DNA of 64,000 nt from Auanema rhodensis (GCA_964057225.1 OZ059895.1:14942001-15006000), one strand, 5' to 3'; shown: positions 38,320 through 50,600, counted from the stretch's first letter. The notes: generated from the letters alone by a model not told the origin. Numbers and translations: made by a program.

Positions 38320-38578
38320 TTACTTGTCAGCCAGTTCAGGGTTCATGGCTTCCATAATTTGATCAAGTTTTTCTTCTAATATGGGTACAATTTCTTTGTC
38401 AATGAATAGATGGGTTTCATCTAACTCCTGTAATAATCTGCTATAACTTATTTCTATATCTTTTGTTAACCTTGATAATAAATTTACTTCCCAAAGTTCT
38501 TGATTCGTCTAAATGAATAAGAAGTTGCCGCATGGCCGGATCACAAGTAACTAAAAGGCCTTTCTTTACATTAACCAT
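38320..38578 (-). CDS. gtf-2H5: TFIIH subunit p8/TTDA (Tfb5), two exons
   Basis: [36 protein letters not shown]|[35 protein letters not shown]. Confidence 0.95.
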
Positions 38579-38731
38579 TTCCTGAATAGGATGACAATAA
38601 TAATAATAAACACAGTGACAAAAATTGGAAATAAAGAACCAAACAAGGTATGAAATCACACAAAGTACAGTACAATATCAGAGATTTATGTAATAACAAG
38701 TAACAACTAAAGCCTATTAACAAAAAATATT

Positions 38732-39948
38732 TTAGATGCTATACTTCTTTGAACGAGATCTCAAATGCTCATAATATTCCTCCATTTTATCCCATCCTGT
38801 CATAGGTTTGAATCGTCCCTTAAAGCCTGGAGCTGGTCCCTGAAAACTTGATGATTCAAGAGGGATATCAACTCAGATATGCATACCTCTTCTAAGCGAA
38901 CAAAAATATGAATATATCTATATCGAATGGTATTCCAATTTTCATGAGCATGTCTTCTAGCTCCTTTTATAATGTTACTTTGTACCGGGAAGGCATCAGC
39001 CACATACATTTCTCCGGGGAATTCAATGTGAAATTCATTTGTGGCTCTTTCTTTAGCTTCAATTAGAAGCTCACGTAGGATAGATGAACCCTGAATATTA
39101 TATCATTTAGAATAGCCCTCTCTAAGGTGTCATCTTTACTTTCATTTGTTGGAACTCTAATTGAACAATAGCTTCATCAACATTCATTTTCCAAGCAAAT
39201 TGACATGCTTGCCACATTCTCTTTGGGGAGAAGTGTACCTGAAAAGAAAAGCATAACAAATCTATATAAATAAACAAAATTCTTATTAAGCCCATTTTGT
39301 ACTTGTTGTTGTGATAGTTTGAAATAATTTTATATTATAAACTATGAAGCAGAAAGCAACCGTTCCATAACAATTCGACTTCAAATGAAAACTTCACGTA
39401 TACGTCAAATGCAAAATGATTATTCTAATTTTCAAGAGTCATGTTGTTTATAGAAATTATAAAACTTAAAACCACTTACAGATTCTCTGCAATGATATAC
39501 TTCTTTCTTCTTTGGTAAATTAGTTTCAGGGACGACATAGTTTCTTGGCCAAACTACTTTGTTATAGTATTCCCATTTTTCAGGGGTCATTCCATATCCT
39601 TTCAAAGGATCGGGAAAATCATCATCTTTGTTAGCTTTTCTATCCAAGTCCCATTCTGGCGCATAATAAACCTGAAGAGTCAAAAGGAAATGTATAATTT
39701 CCGTTATTTCACGAAAAAACAAAACCTTTGGGGCCAGTGTTTCCTCGGATTGTAGTTTTGGCTTTCTCAAGTTCACCCGACGATCCCACTCCTAGAAGTT
39801 AGCGGTCCCCGATAGAAAAATAATAAAATTATGAAACCTTTTCCGCTGAAGATTTAGAAAAACTTGCTGCTCTATATGCGGCTCTACTAGCTGCAGCTTC
39901 ACTATGGGCTAAACGAACACAGGAGGTCCATAACCGCATCATCTTCAT
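38732..39948 (-). CDS. mrpl-22: Mitochondrial ribosomal protein uL22m, multi-exon
   Basis: WEYYNKVVWP, VYHCRESVHFSPKRMWQACQFAWKMNVDEAIVQL, IIKGARRHAHENWNTIRYRYIHIFVRLEEG. Confidence 0.92.
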
Positions 39949-40603
39949 CTTGAAGACTTTTGTTACACATAGATTTTTTGAAAACTTTTATACTCCTGAT
40001 ATCTATTAAGGTGAGAACCTTCTACTTCTTTATAAATTAATAAAATATACAACCCGTTTATTTGGAATAATTAAATCATAATTACACATTATACATATTG
40101 AACAAAAATAGCGGAATTTGTAAGAATATTTGAAAAATCATAGTTTCTCCTAATTTTCAGGCAGATTGGGGTTGAACTTCAGAAGAGAAATTACTTTACA
40201 GAAAAAAAGCAAGTCAATTCCATTCAGCTCTTTCAAAACTGATCATGCCTAAAAAATTTAATTAAGACGATTCAAAATCTAAAAAAAAACATGCATTGCA
40301 GTCCCCATCCACCACTTTAGAAAGGTTCTGTTGTAAAAAAACAGAGTTCACATCTAGCATTCTATAGTCCATTCTTCTTTGAAAAAAGGCTGAAAAGAAA
40401 AGGACTTTTAGTTTATTAATTCGTACACATATAACAAACCTTGAAAAGAAGTTGGAACGTTAGTTATGCTATCCAAATAGAGTTAGAGCAAAAAATTAGA
40501 AAAATCATGTAAATACATGATAATTTAGTTAAAGAATTAGAAAAAATGACTAGAATGTAGTAAAACGTGAAAATACATATTGGCAAGTTATTGCGTACGT
40601 AAT

Positions 40604-43567
40604 TAATCTTCCCCACTTGTATTGCTTGCCTTTTCTGAAAAAATAATAATAAAACTTAGTTAAGAATGATGAATAAATTGCCTAATGATACGCCCTCATC
40701 TTCGGTTTCTCGACTTGAACGACTAGATGTTAATGAACACACTTTCTTGGTTTCTTTTTCTTTAAGAATAATCTGAAAACAAATAACAAATAGTTAGAAC
40801 AAACTTGAAACAACAAGCTTAACCTCTTCTAAAATAGTATTATATGTGTCACTGGGATAGATAGACTTCAATGACTTTATTTCCTGATCCAAATCTGTCT
40901 TCTCCCTGGAAATACAAGTAAACTTCCAATAAAAATCAGGTTTTAGTCTCACAAAGAAAGTTTGTACTCTATCTCTTCAAGCTTTGAAGACAGCAAGGTT
41001 TGTTGTTGTATCAAGTCCCGAACACGTTGTAAAGATCTCTCCATTGAGCCCAAGGCCTTGAAAGAAATGAATAAAGGAGGCCACGACAAATGGGCTTACT
41101 TGATTGCAACCACAATTCATAATATTAAGTGGCGGAACTAGATCACCGGATGTATAAGCTTCGAACTCTAAGCGATCCATTTTCAAACTTTCATGATTCA
41201 TGTCTTGAACAAATTGGAGAGCACATGACAGATTCGTGAAAAAATATCCTGAAACACCAAAAAAAATTTAAAAACAATTGGAAAACCGAATTTTACCTGA
41301 TTCACCACTCATAACTCGTGATGCTAAAGCAAAGCGACTAATAAATTTTAAATTAGATTGAATAAGCGGAGGATTTCCTTTAAGGAGCACATAAATTAAC
41401 ACCGGGAGAAATTCATCAGCACTAGTAGGAGCATCTAGAAATAGAACATATTTTATGAGCAAACTCGGAAATGTTGAACTCACTTGATTCTTTTAAAGCT
41501 TCGAAAATTTTATGAGAACAGCTGACCAGGCAATCGAGTTTTTCTCGAACTGCACGTTTACTATTAATATCAATCATCTCTGATATGGCATCATCCAAGT
41601 GATCACGGACCTATAAAAATCAAAAAATTGTCTGGAAGACAGGAAAACACTATGATGTACCTTTTGCATGGAGAAATCAAGCTTTGTCTCCAGAAAACCG
41701 GCAGTAACCCAGTTCAAGGATCTGATTCGGTCCTGCAAAGACAGGTCCGCAACTTCTTCATCGGAACTGCAAAAAAAGTAATGGAAAAACTGAGTTCAAA
41801 TATTACTTACCTAGCACAGAAAAGATGATTATAACAACAGATGCATACATAGGTCTCAACTTCTTCGATGACATCCTGAGCTTTAATCGACGATTCTATA
41901 AAAGTTAGATAAGATGACACCAGCCATCATATATTCCTACTCTCTTGGCGAAAATATGGAGTATTGTTGAGTTTCTCCAACAGATATTGATAAAACTGCT
42001 GAACCAATTCAGATATATCGTCTGGCGAAAATCGCAGCTAAAAACAATTAAAAATGAGAAAAACACTGAAAATCATATCCGACCTCGTGAATTTTATTAA
42101 CAGCTTGTTTTGTTTGTCGTGTAACTTCCTGAACAATAGCTGTAGGCAACTTCGTTACCAAATAATCTGCCAATTTTTCTCGTGCTGCTTTACTATCAGG
42201 ACTCAGCTGTCTAACTCTGAAACAAATTCAGATATGTTTCTCAAGGTTGGTCTCTGATTTCCAAAGGTTTTTGCGGCAGGCAGTCCCCAAAAATACATAT
42301 ATACAACTCGCCACTCAAGCCAAATATATATATATATGTGTGATTAACTAGTAATTCTTACTAAACACAATGAGTAGGTCAGATAATTAAAAAATTGTTA
42401 GAAAGAGAAAAATTTTAATTAGCAGCTTGCGCTGTATTAACTTATCAAAAAAATTAATTTTTGCTCGCTATACAAATCGAATAAGACACTTTCAATTGTA
42501 TGAGTTGATCTCACTTCCCTCTTCGCACTGGAAATTAAAGTATTTCTCAGTAGTTGAAGAACTCTAGTACTATGCCAATTACGAAGATAAACGGATAATT
42601 TATTTATAAAATCCGCTATCACGTGACTTCAGTGATAGAAAGAGAAAGAGAGAGTAAGAGATACAGAGTATGCGTAAGCTATTCGCTTATTCATAATGCT
42701 GACGCTTGGGTTTTGGTTATGGTTGACCAAGAAAAACAGAAATTCACGAGACAAGCGAGTGCCATCTCGCACGAAAAACTTGAGAAAAAGCCCAATGTAT
42801 CTCGGAAAACTTTGAAAAAAGTGCAAGCGTGAACTATGACAACAACCACGACAAAACAAAGAAAATTAGAGAGTGAATATATTAGGAATATTTCAAATTG
42901 CTTTTTTTTGTTAAGAGTGGTAAAGATTAAAAAAGAAATGTAGAGAGAGAGAGAAAGATTAAACTTACGAAAATTGCTATAAACGAATGATTGTCAAGTG
43001 AATAAGCAATTAGACATTAGCAATTATCTTACTTTCAAGTTCTAACGTTCAGTTTTTAATCACAGGTTACGAATGAACAAGTAGTTTATACTATAAACAC
43101 TAACCTTGAAGGAGAAACTTGAGGTACTGATTGCTGAGCAGAATCAACTGATGGTGAGGATGTTAAAGTAGGAGATTTCCAAATTTTCTTAAACGTGAGT
43201 GAACGGCTCTCGGTTGAAAGTTTTCGCCTTTCTTGAAAGCTATCAAAGCTTAACAAAGTCCTATGAAAAAAAACAGGTAAATGAGTTACTTTGAAAAACA
43301 AAAAAACCTATTTTTAGCAAAATCCAAATTTCTCTTTTCAAGAATTTGATGATGTCTCCAACATTTTGAGCATCTATTTCCCCATTGGGGAGTTCCAAAA
43401 AATCCGCAGCCATTTACACAAAGCTGGAAAGCAATCAAAGATAAGAAGAAAAATATAGAAGTTACCAAGTCTTTCTCGCTGATTTGAACCCTAATTCTCT
43501 TATTCTCGTCTGGCTCTTCTACTTCAGTTGAAGCAGAAGCATGGCTTTCTTCTCTGTACACAGACAT
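40604..43567 (-). CDS. rabx-5: Rabex-5 (A20 zinc finger plus VPS9 Rab5 GEF), multi-exon
   Basis: A20 Zn[26 protein letters not shown]9 motifs [44 protein letters not shown]. The 3' end is approximate. Confidence 0.92.
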
Positions 43568-44580
43568 GGCGCTGAAACACAATGGAATAAATTCAATTGA
43601 TATGAAAGTAATAGGTTCAGAAAGATATTGGTGGGGGGAAACAAGAACGAGAACTAGATGATCTTCACTAATATTCGGCAAGAGCACACAGCTCAAACTA
43701 GACGAAGAAATGGCAAGAGAAGTGGAGTCGTTGGCTCCAAAAGTCCATGAGGCGGCATTGTATAAAAGGACATATGTCCTCTAAGTACGTGCAAGAGCAG
43801 AAATTTCAAATAAACTGAGCAAAAGACCAAGAATAGAAAGGTAAAAACGGTAAATGAAGGTTCGATGAATTCAATTTCACAATTTCTGATCATTAATTTA
43901 GTATAGAGAGAATCAGCATAAACGCCAAAAAGCAAAAAACTAATGTAAACGAAAAACAAATTCTGAGGGAGCAAAACAAGAACGAGTGGCAAGACAAACT
44001 AAAGGAGGCCTGTCCGGCTATCAGCCAGGGACACGCCCAAAACAAAAATAAGCCTAGTATAGAGGATACACAAAAAGAAACGGATGAGACAATGAAGCAG
44101 AGATAAGCGGTCTCGGGTAACGGTAATAAAGTGACAAGTATAATTGATTTTATCAATAAAAACTCACTTAACACAATCCGATGGCAGGATATCTATGCAA
44201 GGCACATCTAAATTGAAAATTGATTGATTAAGCGATGAAAAACAGTATAAGCGATAAGAAGTGTCTCGAACACGCAGTGTGATATCGATTACAAACTAAG
44301 AAATAAAAAAAATCTTTAATATTCTCTAACAACCTACTTAGACGTATATCACAAAACATTAATAATAAAGATATACGAGAGAGATAATTCACCTGAAAAT
44401 CCATAGAAGGCACAAGAAATAATGAGCAAACTAGGATTACGGCAGATAGAACCGCCACAAATACCGGCAAGTTAACAAGTTCTTTATATGTACAATGGGA
44501 TTTGAAAACAGAAATTACTATCTAACCAAAAACCCAAGGAAATGCAGAATACGATTCATAATCATACTAAAAAACATCTT

Positions 44581-45770
44581 CTAATTTCCCAAAACTCTGG
44601 CAATTACTTCAGAGCAATCATCGGATAAACATTTATCACTCAGCCAGGAGTGAAGCTCTTTCTTATACTCCTCCTTCTTGCAAGCAGTTGCGATGAAGGC
44701 ACGTGCTTCATTAGGCTGTTCAAGACGCATGTAATGAACAATCATGTAGAAAGCTGCATCACTGTCGGCTGAAATTAATGCAACTCATGAATATCTCAAC
44801 CTTGTGCTGAAAGTAAGTTTTCAACCTCGTTTAGCCGCCTCTTTCATCCACTTTAGGGATAATTCCTCGTCTTTCTCTGTTCCTTCCCCTCTCAAATAGC
44901 AGAGAGCCAATGAATACATGGAAGCAGCATGACCGAGCTCAGCAGCGTCAGCCCAATTATAAAAGGCCTGCAAATAAAAAGTATGAGATAGGTTTAGCTG
45001 GAGAAAAAAACTACAAACCTCAAGCTTGTTCGATGTTATTCCAATCCCGTAGAACAGACAATCACCGTAGTTGTACATGGCCTCAACGTTTCCATGTTCG
45101 GCAGCATTTTTGAATCTAAAATATTGACCTTTTGTTTGGTTTGATGGAGGAATGTTTGCCTTCGAACAGCTTCAGTTCGCATGCCAGTCTCCATCAACTC
45201 CTCGCCAATTTTATTCTCTAGGTCCCAAGCGAGTTCATCTAATCGACCCACCCCATCCGAGCTTTTACCATCACCTGTGACATCTGTTTGACAAGACACC
45301 TTCAAGAAAGAATATTACATTTTAATTCAAATTGCTTGGTTCTTACTTCCGCTGATTTGCAGAGAGTTTTACTAACTTTTCTTAGATTCTTGGAACAAAC
45401 AGAACCATTTGATATTGGCTTCAACGAATTATCAAGAACCTCGAACGAATACTGTAAAAAAGCCGTACAATTACGAAAAAAAAACAAAGAAACAAACCAA
45501 ATATGGATTCGAGAGATTTGGATTGAAATGAGTCGCTTGATTATTAGGATTGAGTAAATTGAATAGAGGGATCACAGCATCAATCAAACGGCTAAAACTA
45601 TTATTAAAAATAAACAGAAAAAAATGATAAAAAGTTGCTAACCTGGTAGGGGTAGAGGAAGGGTTCTCCTCTTCGTTTTCGTTTTGGGAAGTTGTAACTT
45701 GGTGAGGAAGAGTAACCAAACGAGGACTGTTTCTAAGGATATTTGAGAGTGCTAAACGTTGAACACTCAT
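44581..45770 (-). CDS. Sel1-repeat protein with a mitochondrial presequence-like N-terminus (DELE1-like), multi-exon with one GC-AG intron
   Basis: MSVQRLALSNILRNSPRLV..., then Sel1 repeats ENKIGEELMETGMRTEAVRRFKNAAEHGNVEAMYNYGDCLFYGIG and WADAAELGHAASMYSLALCYLRGEGTEKDEELSLKWMKEAAKR. The Sel1 call is secure; DELE1 orthology is tentative. Confidence 0.75.
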
Positions 45771-47608
45771 GCTACGTTTCTAAGCAGTCATATCTCGTCT
45801 AAACTACTTCTACCTAGGATCAAAATTATATTAAAATAATAACTGTCAATAAAATATAAAACGACGAAAAAGCGAATTAAAGCTGACCATTAACAGTGAA
45901 TAGAGAAAACGAATAAATAACTACTGGTGAAAAAAATATTATCGGAAAAAAGAGATGTATGACAAAAAGCAAAGTCACACGACACATTATCAATGATACC
46001 GTTAGGTTCAAAGATCAATAAAGAACAAAACATTTAATTCAATACAATATTATCTTATAGATGCATTCGTGACATCCTAAAATTAAAGAAGTTTATTTTT
46101 CTAACACAATTAAGACAAAACGAATCGAAATAAGAAGACGTTGCATAGTATAAGCTGGAACACTCCAGGCCAGGGTTTCGCGATGTAGCAGACAAAATTG
46201 TCATTGGAGCGATCCTTAGTTTGTTCAAACTGAGTAATGACTAAGCATTAAACATTTATGACTTTTGTGCATATACTGCGAAAGAAATAATTAATTTCGT
46301 AAGAAGAAAAAGGAAGAAGAAGTTTTTGTGCGAAAGTCCAGACACTTCTACTCTTACATGAGTCAAAATTGAAAATTTTAAAGAAAATGAAAACGACAGC
46401 ATTACTGATAACGCTACTGATCAGACACTGCGGCTCCGTAAATATTGCTTGGCTGTTTGTAAAGTTCATTTTGATCGGTAAAACCAACAATATGAAACTG
46501 AACTCTCGACTTTCTCGCAACAATCATATCAAATCGAAGGTTTTAATCTCGTTTTAGCGTGTTCTATCATATCACTGATCTCCTCGTCATCAGCTGGCTG
46601 CAGCTTCATCATCATCATCAACATTATGGTCATCTCAACATCTCTCAGCAACATCGGTCTCTAGCTTTTCAGATACAACCAAACACGGTATTGCAATCCG
46701 GTCCATGAAAACATCTTCGTGATGAAGTCAGCCTTTCTTCAGCTTTCATCCATATCTTTGAAGTCTATCTTACCGACCTTGAGGCTTCATCTCCTTATCA
46801 AGCAGCTTCTCGCATCGTATAACACCTTCAATATCAGTCGTACAGAATGCTTGAAGCTGATGAAGTCACAACAATTCTTGTCTCCATGAATAGTCGCCAG
46901 TTAGCTTTCTTCTACTAACTAGATGATCTAATTCAGTTGATGAATTCTAGCTTATTCAGTCTTTTTATAGATTTTAATCTTGTTTTTAATTTTCTATCTA
47001 AATATTTTTATATGATTTGAAGAAATTTATACTGTAACTTTAACCCTTCCGCATATAATATTCCATTTTCATCATATAATTTGCATTTTCAAGCTTTTTT
47101 TCCAACTTTCCCATATGTCACATGAGCTTTTCCGGTCTATTCTTCTTCAGTCCTTTCATCTCCTTTCACCTCCTCATTGCAACTTCTATGGATTTATAAT
47201 TTCTCATTCTCAAGGTCATTTTAACTGGAAATGTTTGATTTTAAGTTTCAAGACAATTGAATGCAAATTTGAGTTTCAAAAAAAAAAAAAAAAGGAAAAA
47301 ATTTAAAAGCTAGTGAGGCTGTCTCATAAAAATGTACATTTACATGAGTTAGGTTGACATACAATACGACATGTTTTTCAAAAATGGCCCCAATAATACT
47401 TGAGCACGCATGCTCTTCAGTTGTCCTTTTTTCCTCTTTTCCAATTGGAATTTATAAAAATTATGCCTTACACCAGTGTTTCGGATAAGGAGTTAGACGC
47501 ACTTTTGAGGAACATGTCAACTATTTCTATGAAACAACAAGAGCAATCTCTTTCATATACTCTTTCTCCACCTTCTCACTCTCTTTATCTTCTACTCATT
47601 CTCTCTCT

Positions 47609-47660
<52 letters not shown>

Positions 47661-50600
47661 TCTCTTTCTGTGAGATGTTTGCAAGATTAGATCTACTGAG
47701 GCAGCTGGAAAGATGTTTTTGAAAGCAAAAAAGAGATAACTGGGGGGAAAATAAGCAACCTTGGCATAGCTGAACGCAATTTTTGTTGGAAGTTTTCTTC
47801 GTTTTGACGGAAATCCTTGATCAGTCTCGTGACCATCCAAGACCTTCCGTGGAGTGAGGAAAGGGATCAAAGATTTCCATAAAAAGCTGGAAAAGCTGGA
47901 TGACGGACGACAAAAGGAAATACGAAATTGTCACCAAATCGAGCTTTTTTTCATGAAAAACGTTTAACCGGCAGATCTCAGACTTACAGCAGAGATGGAC
48001 AGTTTGTCCCGTCCTTGAGCTTGTCATCAACAAGAAGCATCAGCATGTGCAGAGATAGTAGCTAGGCTATCTATGATTGCAATAGATACTACAGGAGGCC
48101 AGGCAGACTGCTGAGAGACATTTCATCAGATCATATATATGGACACAGAAACAGGGACGATTTCCATACGTAGTCTTCATTCCCATCTTCCTCTACTACG
48201 CTATTCGTCAGTTTCTGTCTTACCCTGTTCGATTGCTAATCATTCAAGTTCTTCCAATATAGGGTGGTCGAGGCTGCATCATCACAACTCTCCCCCCCCC
48301 CTTTTCTTATTGCGTTTTCCAACCTATTCGTTATCGTTTCTGTTACGTAACTGATCAAGCAGGCCATATAGCAAAAAACCGGAAGATTATACTACAGATA
48401 ACCGGCTTGTTATGACTTTTTCCATTTCGTGTGACACAACTAGCTCTTTCCTAATATCCTATATGGGTGCTATCACGCTCACATGTGTATGTGTTTATGT
48501 ATATTGGATGTACATATGTGTGTATGTCTGTATCGGGATATATGTACATATATGGAGAAGAGAACACAATATTGAGTAATATTCTTTGATCCGTAAAAGA
48601 CCGTTCACACTTACAATGCTACTACAAGGCTTATTGCCCATACACAACTAGGTTAACAGATGCTTAGTGTCATATAAAGACACACATTTACAGGCTTCTA
48701 GAGCTAATTTGATGTCTTTTTTAAAGGAAAAACGTAATGTTATTTCCAATCAACTGCACATTTTACGTGGAAAGCAATGCTTTAGACAGTTTTCTGAAAA
48801 TGAAAAACACAATCTTATTCTGAGTCATGCTCTTGCTCATTGGCTATAGGCAATTGTACTGCTTCGTTTGTCTGTTTTTCATATTTTTCTGACCACAGGC
48901 TAGTTAGTTAGCTGCAAACGGCTACAGCCCAGCTCCAACAACACACCTCTACATGTGGAGCGAATAATCAGAAACAAGAGCCTTCAGGCAAGCAGTAACA
49001 GCACCAGTATCTATACCCATAAACAAAGCTTCAAATACAATTTATTTCCCATACAAAGTTCTTGAAATGAACTGAATAGCAGCAGGCAAGTAAATTGAGC
49101 TGAAAAGAATTCATTTCTATTGGAAATAGGTGGAGGGGTTAAAACTGTCTCTTTTCAAAATTCACGCCCTAATATCGTCGATATGTTTGTACAGCTTATG
49201 AGAGTGTTCCTGTGATCATTAAAATCAGAAAACAAACATTTTTAGCTCATTTTGGATAACATATCACCTGATATATGTATCAGAAACATGTAATTTATAT
49301 TTTAGTTGGCTAAAAATCTCAATTCTCAACTACGTTTCCGCCGAAAACAAATAGAAAAAAAAAAGAGATGGGGACAACTATATTTCATAATCCATCATAT
49401 TATACCGATCGATCTATTGTATGTCTTTCTTTACATACCTGAACACATCAGCTTATACATCTAGCTCAAAGCTTCATCTATATTGAATTAGCTTTTTGCG
49501 TTTTTTTGCATTTTGTGAAATCTTACAAGATTACGAGAATGAAATACAATGTTCATTACAAGTATCGTATTGTGGTCAGATGTTGAGAGAATATGTGTAT
49601 GTATATGTACATATAAGTAAGAAAAACTAAGAATAGTATATCCGAAAAACAAGAATACGATCATGGCGACACTATGCTATCCTGCCTGCCTGCATGCCTG
49701 CCTGCTTGCCTGCTTCCAAACAAGAGAGAGCTAAACAGCCCTGTATTTTTTAGACCAATGGTCAGATGGCTATTGGTGAACCAAAAAAGTGAAACTGAAG
49801 CACGCTTCAAAGCTTCTCTTCGGCCATAACACGTCGTATGTAGTATTATGAATGAATAATAATAATAATAAGATATATGGATAAAATAAAGGAAAGGAAA
49901 GGAAGGGGGGGGGGGGGTTGAGAACAACCTATGCATGAACATATATGGGTAAATAGAAATAATAGATGTATAAATGAATTATATATATATAATATATATA
50001 TATATAGTTAGATGTTTTTCTTTGAATAATAATAATAATAATTAAATATATATGTATAATCCATTATATCTTTTGTTATTATGTTTATATATTTATTCAA
50101 ATAATCTTAATTGGCGCGTTATTCGTGTTTTTTCTTATTCCACGTAATCACGTGAAAAAGTAAACATAAAGCTAACTGATGTCATCAATTGCAATTGCAC
50201 TTTAAGCATCAAACGTTTGTTTTATCTTCAGAAAAATAAACTCGTATGTATGTATTTCCATTTAAAATAGTAGGAAGTAATTGAAAAAAGTAAACAGAGG
50301 AAGATAATATGCTTTTATGCTGTCTGCAATATTGTGGCATGCTTAAAGTTCAAATGTTGTACTTGTGGTAGCTGATAGACTATAGAGAGAAGATGTATAC
50401 ATACACAACACAATCTCCTCTCAAAAATTTTTGTCCTTTTTTATCAAAAAGAAAAGAAAAAAAAGCTGTAATTTGATGTCATGTGAGTGTATGTTATTCA
50501 GCATCATTATGCTTTCTTCCAAGCCTATACAGCTTATTCAGTCATAATAAGCTGTAAGCATTTTGGTTTTAATATCAATTATATATTTAGAAAATATAGA

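What the first reader, a model, noticed from the sequence alone, without database searches (positions are those of the whole stretch)
44581..45770. DELE1-like mitochondrial stress-relay candidate in a nematode
Seen: the first ~29 aa (MSVQRLALSNILRNSPRLVTLPHQVTTSQ) are Arg/Ser/Leu-rich with no acidic residues, like a mitochondrial presequence. A poorly structured middle is followed by C-terminal Sel1 repeats. The first repeat (N.IGEELM.TG....A...FKNAA..G...AMYNYG.C...G.G) follows the pattern I recall for the first repeat of human DELE1 (N.LG.ENMKSG....A...FQKAA..G...AQYNAG.C...G.G). Established: mammalian DELE1 is imported into mitochondria, cleaved by OMA1 and activates the eIF2-alpha kinase HRI. 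The characterised C. elegans eIF2-alpha kinases are GCN-2 and PEK-1, and its mitochondrial stress signalling is described mainly through ATFS-1. Inference: this could be an overlooked HRI-independent mitochondria-to-cytosol relay. It heads a co-oriented cluster that includes mrpl-22.
Basis: partly seen in the sequence, partly recalled or inferred. Interest (0 to 1): 0.78.

Follow-up and report, generated by a model that had tools for sequence, protein, structure and literature searches.

The report
Diverged DELE1-like mitochondrial Sel1 protein
This worm expresses a small gene for a protein with a mitochondrial-type address tag, a floppy middle and a helical-repeat binding domain; it is laid out like the human stress messenger DELE1 and may be a distant relative, but kinship and any signalling role are unproven.

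Summary
RNA contigs from four runs (one study) define a minus-strand, seven-exon gene (44314-45815) that encodes 297 aa.

What the protein looks like:
- Residues 1-30 carry net charge +3, no acidic residue, and form an amphipathic stretch conserved in five nematode orthologues.
- Residues ~31-118 are disordered in the model of the Auanema orthologue.
- Residues ~120-297 form a ten-helix Sel1/TPR solenoid that opens with a long first helix.

The DELE1 reading is partly supported.
- For: the nearest protein-language-model clusters are chordate and arthropod DELE families. A family profile matches human DELE1 C-terminal domain (8D9X) in one collinear stretch (E 1.6e-16). The structural alignment starts at DELE1's first helix (Z 15.6, 22% identity).
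- Against: generic bacterial Sel1 proteins and SEL1L score higher. The first-repeat region alone does not find DELE1. Fold comparison cannot separate Sel1 families. No reciprocal search or tree could be run.

The genome shows no OMA1-type peptidase (only the ZMPSTE24/FCE-1 locus) and no HRI-specific domain; both are weak negatives. The family was found only in a few clade V nematodes, and none returned was Caenorhabditis.

Best reading (about 0.5): a diverged, C-terminally shortened DELE1-type mitochondrial protein. A stress-relay function is untested. The scan's notes on this genome (the only one they cover) held nothing on this gene.

The parts
45643..45815 (-). Exon 1. The 5' UTR runs 45771-45813/15 and the CDS starts at the ATG at 45770. 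It encodes residues 1-42 plus two bases of codon 43. The 5' end carries an SL1-like leader remnant.
   Evidence: RNA contigs of four runs. The loose end CAAACTTG, whose reverse complement is CAAGTTTG, lies beyond 45815 in run X2. Translation.
45681..45770 (-). Coding for the first 30 residues, a presequence-like amphipathic basic stretch. It has 3 Arg and no Asp or Glu, and is conserved as MS.(Q/H)RL(A/S)(L/I)....(I/L)R...R in five species.
45780..45791 (-). Three-codon upstream ORF (ATG ACT GCT TAG) in the 5' UTR. It is in frame with the main ATG and closed by a stop, so the main ORF cannot extend further upstream.
   Evidence: Read directly from the sequence. It lies inside the transcribed exon 1.
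45498..45591 (-). Exon 2. Linker containing a short conserved hydrophobic helix (RLIDAVIPLFNLL).
   Evidence: (helix 41-50 in the orthologue model).
45347..45451 (-). Exon 3. Poorly conserved, disordered linker.
45160..45299 (-). Exon 4. Carries the conserved EVS(C/V)QT(D/E) motif, the long first helix (RL..L.W.LEN.IGEELM) and helix A of the first degenerate repeat.
45116..45159 (-). 44-nt GC-AG intron between exons 4 and 5.
   Evidence: The joint 45115/45160 with ends CT..GC on the + strand appears in all four runs.
45019..45115 (-). Exon 5. End of the first repeat and helix A of the first canonical Sel1 repeat (FKNAAEHGNVEAMYNYGDCLFYGIGITSNKLE).
   Evidence: Pfam Sel1 23.5 bits.
44826..44967 (-). 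Exon 6. Canonical Sel1 repeat.
   Evidence: Pfam Sel1 37.2 bits, over the gathering score.
44314..44768 (-). Exon 7. Contains the last degenerate repeat and the C-terminal capping helices. The CDS ends at 44584 and the stop TAG is 44581-44583. The 3' UTR extends to about 44314-44337.
   Evidence: The tail has only nematode relatives.

Best explanation
This is a single-copy, expressed nematode gene for a 297-aa protein of the DELE1 type.

Shown:
- The transcript is spliced from seven exons and probably SL1 trans-spliced.
- The protein has a conserved, basic, amphipathic N-terminus without acidic residues.
- It has a linker of about 90 residues that is predicted to be disordered and holds one short hydrophobic helix.
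- It has a confidently folded C-terminal solenoid of ten helices. This consists of a long first helix, two canonical and two degenerate Sel1 repeats, and capping helices.

Inferred:
- The N-terminus is a matrix-type presequence that sends the protein into the mitochondrial import pathway.
- The solenoid is a protein-binding module.
- The gene is a diverged DELE1 homologue, shortened at the C-terminus. It is kept in some clade V nematodes (this species, Auanema, Heterorhabditis and two unnamed transcriptomes) and was not returned from any Caenorhabditis.

Speculative:
- By analogy, failed import or cleavage in the linker could leave the solenoid in the cytosol, where it would bind an effector.
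- No HRI-specific domain and no OMA1-type protease were detected here. Any such relay would therefore need other partners. A constitutive role inside mitochondria is at least as likely.
For: Gene model and expression. Frame and length. Single copy in the genome.

N-terminus: net +3, no acidic residue before position 30-35, and hydrophobic moment 0.77-0.84, in the top 0-2% of windows within each protein. This holds in all five orthologues.

Architecture: in the AlphaFold model of orthologue P0001, residues 1-118 have pLDDT below 50 with one helix at 41-50, and residues 122-296 have pLDDT above 90 with ten helices. The first helix spans 122-145. Published DELE1 has an N-terminus that is mostly unstructured except for one hydrophobic helix, and a C-terminal domain of 11 helices with a long first helix at 225-260.

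Kinship leads:
- The top three ESM Atlas feature hits are DELE clusters from two phyla. They share 186-196 features, above the tool's same-family mark of 170. Bacterial Sel1 clusters share 154-158.
- Single-sequence HMMER against 8D9X gives 41 bits, E 1.3e-9.
- The family profile gives 63.7 bits, E 1.6e-16. Its best stretch covers profile 112-260 against chain 368-517. This is the only target whose best alignment reaches in front of the repeats.
- Foldseek ranks 8D9X as the best eukaryotic hit, with 195 aligned columns and TM by target of 0.64.
- VIA-align gives Z 15.6, rmsd 3.0, 165 residues and 22% identity, aligning model 117-288 to DELE1 228-402.

Elimination: only two Sel1 loci were detected in the 181-Mb genome, this gene and one on contig 1. 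COA7 scores 16 bits and LRP2BP 49 bits.
Against: - Sel1 repeats resemble each other across families. Bacterial Sel1 proteins (up to 172 bits) and SEL1L (119 bits) outscore DELE1.
- With single exons, LRP2BP (35.9 bits) and SEL1L (32.5) beat DELE1 (27.2).
- A profile of the pre-repeat region plus the first helix pair finds no DELE1 at E up to 10. The forward extension of the alignment therefore has no independent support.
- The N-terminal half alone gives no feature hit.
- Structure-based Atlas searches return only bacterial Sel1 clusters.
- VIA Z-scores for HcpC, SEL1L and bacterial Sel1 proteins (16-17.7) tie with or exceed DELE1's.
- The solenoid ends near DELE1 position 402-410, so the helices that form DELE1's second oligomer interface (R403, L405, L409, F431, S432) have no counterpart.
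- No OMA1-like M48 peptidase and no HRI2_3H domain were found in the genome.
- Mitochondrial targeting rests on simple composition measures only. No dedicated predictor was available.
Confidence: 0.5

Rival explanations
1. It is a lineage-restricted, generic Sel1-repeat adaptor with no specific relationship to DELE1. The resemblance comes from the shared repeat consensus plus a common layout of targeting peptide, linker and repeat domain. The protein would act as a constitutive scaffold or assembly factor in mitochondria or elsewhere.
For: - The highest sequence and fold scores go to bacterial Sel1 proteins, HcpC and SEL1L.
- No DELE1 signal exists outside the canonical repeats.
- The C-terminal exon has only two real relatives among 1.84 billion representatives.
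- Word and profile searches return only four nematode relatives.
Against: - The feature search ranks DELE clusters from two phyla above all other Sel1 clusters, including the eukaryotic ones. Shared-feature counts are in the tool's same-family range.
- The match to DELE1 is collinear from the first helix onward.
- Among the animal Sel1 families compared here (DELE1, COA7, LRP2BP, SEL1L), only DELE1 is reported to carry a mitochondrial targeting sequence; that COA7 lacks a presequence is from my own knowledge.
Confidence: 0.35
2. It is the nematode orthologue of another animal Sel1 family: COA7 (an intermembrane-space assembly factor), LRP2BP (an axonemal protein) or SEL1L (an ER-associated degradation adaptor).
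For: LRP2BP gives the best single-stretch score with exon 6 (35.9 bits). SEL1L gives high summed scores.
Against: - COA7 (7MQZ) scores only 16-22 bits, with 14-16% identity in fold alignments.
- LRP2BP aligns over two repeats only and falls below DELE1 with the full profile.
- SEL1L's score is a sum over four stretches of an 11-repeat protein.
- A second Sel1 locus on contig 1 is available to be the sel-1 orthologue, though it was not examined.
- No signal peptide or membrane anchor is present. The maximum Kyte-Doolittle value over 19 residues is 1.2 or less.
Confidence: 0.07
3. It is a Sel1 gene acquired from bacteria by an ancestor of clade V nematodes and later fitted with introns and a targeting peptide.
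For: Bacterial Sel1 proteins are the top sequence and fold hits. The taxonomic range seen is narrow.
Against: - The gene has six spliceosomal introns and a trans-spliced leader.
- Bacterial hits cover only the consensus repeats, at 19-23% identity in structure alignments.
- Orthologues diverge to 34% identity, which indicates an old nematode gene.
- The feature search prefers animal DELE clusters.
Confidence: 0.03

Closest known systems
DELE1 (DAP3-binding cell death enhancer 1; human structure PDB 8D9X; functional orthologue in Hydra, PMC13600944)
   Same: - Both have an N-terminal targeting-type sequence, a long disordered region with one short hydrophobic helix, and a C-terminal all-helical Sel1-like TPR domain that opens with a long helix.
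- HMM and structural alignments are collinear from that first helix.
- DELE clusters are the nearest by protein-language-model features.
   Different: - 297 aa against 515 aa. The linker is about 90 residues against about 200. The domain has ten helices against eleven.
- There is no counterpart of DELE1 residues from about 403 to 515. That region holds the second oligomer interface, the end of the second HRI-contact bundle (about 330-415), and the C-terminal tail.
- No significant similarity exists outside the repeats.
- OMA1 and an HRI-specific domain were not detected in this genome.
- Cleavage, release and kinase activation are untested.
Bacterial Sel1-repeat proteins (for example Oxalobacter 6OK3, E. 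coli c5321 4BWR, Legionella LceB 8SXQ, Helicobacter HcpC 1OUV)
   Same: They share the repeat fold and give the highest raw scores.
   Different: They are longer arrays of consensus repeats and are secreted or periplasmic. They lack the presequence, the disordered linker and the long leading helix. Their alignments start only at the canonical repeats, at profile position 145-157.
SEL1L / SEL-1 (ER-associated degradation adaptor)
   Same: It carries Sel1 repeats and gives a summed score of 119 bits.
   Different: It has eleven repeats, an ER signal sequence and a membrane anchor. The score comes from four separate stretches. A separate Sel1 locus exists on contig 1.
LRP2BP and COA7
   Same: Both are small animal Sel1 proteins. 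LRP2BP gives the best single-repeat score with exon 6. COA7 is mitochondrial.
   Different: LRP2BP matches two repeats only and in the solved structure is an axonemal protein of sperm (title). COA7 scores near noise (E 0.04). By my own knowledge, COA7 is a cysteine-rich intermembrane-space protein without a presequence.

Membership tests
Sel1 repeat proteins (Pfam PF08238) | At least one Sel1 repeat scoring over Pfam's gathering score | tested here: met
   Exon 6 scores 37.2 bits against a cut-off of 30.7. The genome scan of this locus gives 39.2 bits. Orthologues score 55-66 bits with two stretches.
DELE1 | N-terminal mitochondrial targeting sequence | tested here: inconclusive
   Composition and amphipathicity fit: net +3, no acidic residue in the first 30, moment in the top 0-2% of windows, and conserved in five species. 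No dedicated predictor and no experiment were available.
DELE1 | Long, mostly unstructured N-terminal half with one hydrophobic helix, followed by a C-terminal all-helical TPR/Sel1-like domain that opens with a long helix | tested here: met
   In the orthologue model, residues 1-118 have pLDDT below 50 with a helix at 41-50, and ten helices span 122-296 with the first at 122-145. The model is of P0001, not of the window protein itself (67% identity).
DELE1 | Specific sequence kinship: reciprocal best hit or a supported clade with DELE1 rather than other Sel1 families | tested here: inconclusive
   Forward tests are mixed. The profile gives E 1.6e-16 to 8D9X in a collinear alignment, and DELE clusters come first by features. 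However, other Sel1 proteins score higher and the non-canonical region alone finds nothing. No reverse search or tree was possible because no DELE sequence could be fetched.
DELE1 | Full C-terminal domain including helices 10-11 (second oligomer interface) | tested here: not met
   The structural alignment ends at DELE1 residue 402 for model residue 288 of 296. The interface residues R403, L405, L409, F431 and S432 lie beyond it.
DELE1 | Self-assembly through the first helix | tested here: inconclusive
   Hydrophobic positions in the first helix are conserved: L/F/I at 128, L/I at 131 and I at 139 in P0001 numbering. The four-copy complex prediction gave no answer.
OMA1-DELE1-HRI pathway | OMA1 (M48 peptidase) present in the same genome | tested here: not met
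   PF01435 hits only the locus that also carries Peptidase_M48_N, which is the ZMPSTE24/FCE-1 type. Two weak hits are M1-type aminopeptidase motifs. The scan is exon by exon in six frames, so this is a weak negative.
OMA1-DELE1-HRI pathway | HRI (EIF2AK1) present in the same genome | tested here: inconclusive
   The best hit of the HRI-specific Pfam domain HRI2_3H is 20.9 bits, below the 27-bit cut-off. It contains a stop and has no kinase nearby. Motif and exon searches for eIF2-alpha kinases found only gcn-2 and missed even PEK-1, so they are not sensitive enough.
OMA1-DELE1-HRI pathway | Stress-dependent cleavage, release to the cytosol and kinase activation | not testable with these tools
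   Needs experiments.
COA7 | Specific similarity to COA7 | tested here: not met
   7MQZ gives 21.7 bits with exon 6 and 16.4 bits, E 0.04, with the family profile. Identity in fold alignments is 14-16%.
LRP2BP | Collinear similarity over the whole repeat domain | tested here: not met
   9FQR aligns only to profile 189-254, about two repeats, at 49 bits. Foldseek ranks it 20th with 17% identity.

The most novel reading that the evidence does not exclude
Some non-Caenorhabditis rhabditid nematodes keep a trimmed DELE1-type sensor of mitochondrial import that works without OMA1 and HRI. When import fails, its Sel1 solenoid would stay in the cytosol and engage a different effector, for example GCN-2, PEK-1 or another partner. 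Alternatively it preserves an ancestral role inside mitochondria, such as binding the mitoribosomal protein DAP3, after which DELE1 is named. Either way it would show what DELE1 did before, or apart from, HRI.
Probability: 0.12. Interest if true: 0.8.

Novelty: new variant of a known kind. Interest (0 to 1): 0.5.

Why it matters
[quoted passage not shown] A DELE1-type gene in culturable rhabditid nematodes such as Auanema would have three consequences. It would show that absence in C. elegans reflects lineage-specific loss, not absence from the whole phylum. It would offer a natural case of a DELE1-like protein in a genome where its two known partners are not detectable. It would also give a small, tractable protein for asking what the DELE1 fold does apart from HRI. 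If the kinship fails, this is simply one more lineage-restricted Sel1 protein with a probable mitochondrial address.

Tried and rejected
1. Joined protein. Exons were searched by reference and the 67%-identical orthologue P0001 stood in for the whole protein. The joined translation was computed only inside scripts, for frame, length, composition and alignment to fetched orthologues.
2. Fetching DELE sequences for a reciprocal search and a tree. All three word-index searches and the one exhaustive search (spent on the C-terminal exon) returned only nematode relatives and generic Sel1 proteins. No DELE, LRP2BP, COA7 or SEL1L sequence became available, so there was no hhalign and no phylogeny.
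3. PDB search with exon 4, exon 7 and a profile of the pre-repeat region. No DELE1 match was found.
4. Atlas feature search with residues 1-135 alone. No usable hit.
5. Atlas searches by shape. Only bacterial Sel1 clusters came back.
6. Four-copy complex prediction of the C-terminal domain. The verdict was 'no answer' (score 0.00), which is evidence neither for nor against self-assembly.
7. Hunt for HRI.
   - The degenerate pattern for the eIF2-alpha-kinase hinge motif found gcn-2 plus two chance sites.
   - Patterns for HRDLKPxNIF and GTxxY(M/A)SPEQ found nothing, not even PEK-1.
   - The gcn-2 exon used as a query returned STE20, CDK, MAPK and MELK-type kinases.
   - These searches are too insensitive to show absence.
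8. Weak M48 hits on contigs 4 and 6 were rejected as M1 aminopeptidase motifs.
9. The scan's earlier notes held nothing on eIF2 kinases, OMA1 or Sel1 in this genome.
10. A membrane anchor in the linker was rejected. The maximum Kyte-Doolittle value over 19 residues is 1.2 or less.
11. A conserved C-terminal disulphide was rejected. The Cys pair is absent in P0006.

Full report
**1. Is the thing there?**

Yes. The region 44581-45770 holds no long ORF, because the gene is split.

Contigs from four runs of one study lie on it with six clean joints. They give these minus-strand exons:
- 45643-45815
- 45498-45591
- 45347-45451
- 45160-45299
- 45019-45115
- 44826-44967
- 44314-44768

Five introns are GT-AG. 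The 44-nt intron 45116-45159 is GC-AG in all four runs. The runs are only guessed to be RNA, but spliced contigs with short nematode-type introns can hardly be anything else.

One contig carries eight extra letters beyond 45815. Their reverse complement, CAAGTTTG, is the end of the nematode SL1 leader (the SL1 identification is from my own knowledge).

The joined CDS is 894 nt, giving 297 aa with one terminal stop. A three-codon upstream ORF at 45780-45791 is in frame and closed, so the ATG at 45770 is the start.

Exons were searched by reference, and the joined translation was used only inside scripts.

**2. What the protein looks like**

- The first 30 residues have three Arg and no Asp or Glu. 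They also have the strongest amphipathic moment in the protein.
- Exons 5 and 6 carry Sel1 repeats.
- The exhaustive search with the C-terminal exon found just two real relatives among 1.84 billion representatives. They are P0001 (296 aa, Auanema sp. JU1783) and P0002 (a transcript assembly).
- A profile search added P0006 and a Heterorhabditis bacteriophora fragment, P0007.
- Identities to the window protein are 67, 46, 34 and 43%.
- The most conserved parts are the N-terminal 30 residues, a QN(D/E) motif, a short hydrophobic helix, an EVS(V/C)QT(D/E) motif, the helix RL..L.W.LEN.IG.ELM, and the repeats.
- The AlphaFold model of P0001 is disordered up to residue 118, apart from a helix at 41-50. 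It then forms ten confident helices, the first of them long (122-145).
- Pfam recognises two canonical Sel1 repeats in each orthologue.
- There is no membrane segment.
- The gene is single-copy in a 181-Mb assembly, so the organism is not C. elegans.

**3. Is it DELE1?**

Evidence for:
- The Atlas feature search with P0001 lists three DELE clusters first: 'DELE protein' from Chordata, 'Death ligand signal enhancer family protein' from Arthropoda, and a further arthropod cluster. They share 186-196 features, above the tool's stated same-family mark of 170. Bacterial Sel1 clusters share about 155.
- HMMER finds human DELE1 (8D9X) at E 1.3e-9 with P0001 and at E 1.6e-16 with the family profile. 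The best stretch (profile 112-260) is the only one that begins in front of the canonical repeats.
- Foldseek makes 8D9X the best eukaryotic hit and aligns 195 columns of its 210 resolved residues.
- VIA-align lays model 117-288 on DELE1 228-402 with Z 15.6, rmsd 3.0 and 22% identity. The two domains therefore start together at the long first helix.
- The published description of DELE1 matches the layout. Its N-terminus is unstructured with one hydrophobic helix, and its C-terminal domain has 11 helices with a long first helix at 225-260 that serves both oligomerisation and HRI activation.

Evidence against:
- Every search is topped by bacterial Sel1 proteins, and SEL1L outscores DELE1.
- For single repeats, LRP2BP and SEL1L beat DELE1.
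- A profile limited to the pre-repeat region and the first helix pair finds no DELE1. Neither do exon 4 or exon 7 alone.
- The N-terminal half gives no feature hit.
- Z-scores of 16-17.7 for HcpC, SEL1L and bacterial proteins show that fold alone cannot separate Sel1 families.
- The nematode domain stops where DELE1's helices 10-11 begin.

I could not fetch any DELE, LRP2BP, COA7 or SEL1L sequence, so no reciprocal search or tree was made. I put kinship with DELE1 at a little over one half. COA7 and LRP2BP orthology are unlikely.

**4. The pathway partners**

- PF01435 (M48 peptidase) hits only one real locus. That locus also carries Peptidase_M48_N, so it is the ZMPSTE24/FCE-1 type and not OMA1. 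The two weak hits are M1 aminopeptidase motifs.
- The HRI-specific Pfam domain HRI2_3H has no hit over its cut-off. The best site contains a stop and lies in non-coding-looking DNA with no kinase nearby.
- My motif and exon searches for eIF2-alpha kinases found gcn-2 but not PEK-1. They therefore cannot show that HRI is absent.
- The literature states that DELE1 and HRI seem absent from C. elegans. One review cites a phylogeny that places the origin of HRI among flatworms and nematodes. The question is open for this lineage.

**5. How it most likely works**

- Shown: the gene is expressed and spliced, and the three-part architecture is conserved.
- Inferred: the protein is imported through a presequence, and the solenoid is a binding module.
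- Speculative: the protein acts as an import- or cleavage-dependent relay.

The four-copy complex prediction gave no answer.

**6. Surroundings**

Downstream on the same strand lie three genes:
- a zf-A20 plus VPS9 gene (rabx-5-like)
- a Ribosomal_L22 gene (mrpl-22-like)
- Tfb5

The gap from the 3' end of this transcript (about 44314) to the start of the A20-finger ORF piece (43696) is about 600 nt. Operon status was not tested.

**7. Verdict**

This is a moderately interesting new variant of a known kind. It is worth a proper phylogeny and a localisation experiment in Auanema.

Noticed in passing
window 45116-45159 (minus strand): A GC-AG intron of 44 nt, used in all four runs. Gene finders that allow only GT donors would break this gene here.
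   Followed up: yes
window 45780-45791 (minus strand): A three-codon upstream ORF (M-T-A-stop) sits 9 nt before the main ATG, inside the transcribed 5' UTR. Whether it is conserved or regulatory was not checked.
   Followed up: no
window 45813-45815 and beyond (minus strand 5' end): An SL1-like leader remnant (CAAGTTTG) is joined at an AG acceptor in one contig. This suggests the gene is trans-spliced to SL1, as expected for a first or stand-alone gene.
   Followed up: partly
window 38441-43696 (minus strand): Three co-oriented downstream genes: zf-A20 plus VPS9 (rabx-5-like), Ribosomal_L22 (mrpl-22-like) and TFIIH subunit Tfb5. This may be an operon, but no SL2 evidence was sought.
   Followed up: partly
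L009:1483-1760 (G000 contig 6, about 11754891-11755170): The gcn-2-like kinase exon reads LYIQMEFCE...IHRDITP. After a short intron it continues ANILIDG...DFG. The catalytic loop is therefore HRDITPAN where the usual motif is HRDLKPxN, with Thr in place of the usual Lys. Not compared with other nematodes.
   Followed up: no
window 47400-47870: A long (CT)n/(GA)n low-complexity tract, translating as LSLSLS and RERERE runs on opposite strands, lies upstream of the gene.
   Followed up: no
G000 contig 1, 16743135-16743233 (minus strand): The only other Sel1-repeat hit in the genome scan (30.5 bits). It is presumably the sel-1/SEL1L orthologue but was not examined.
   Followed up: no
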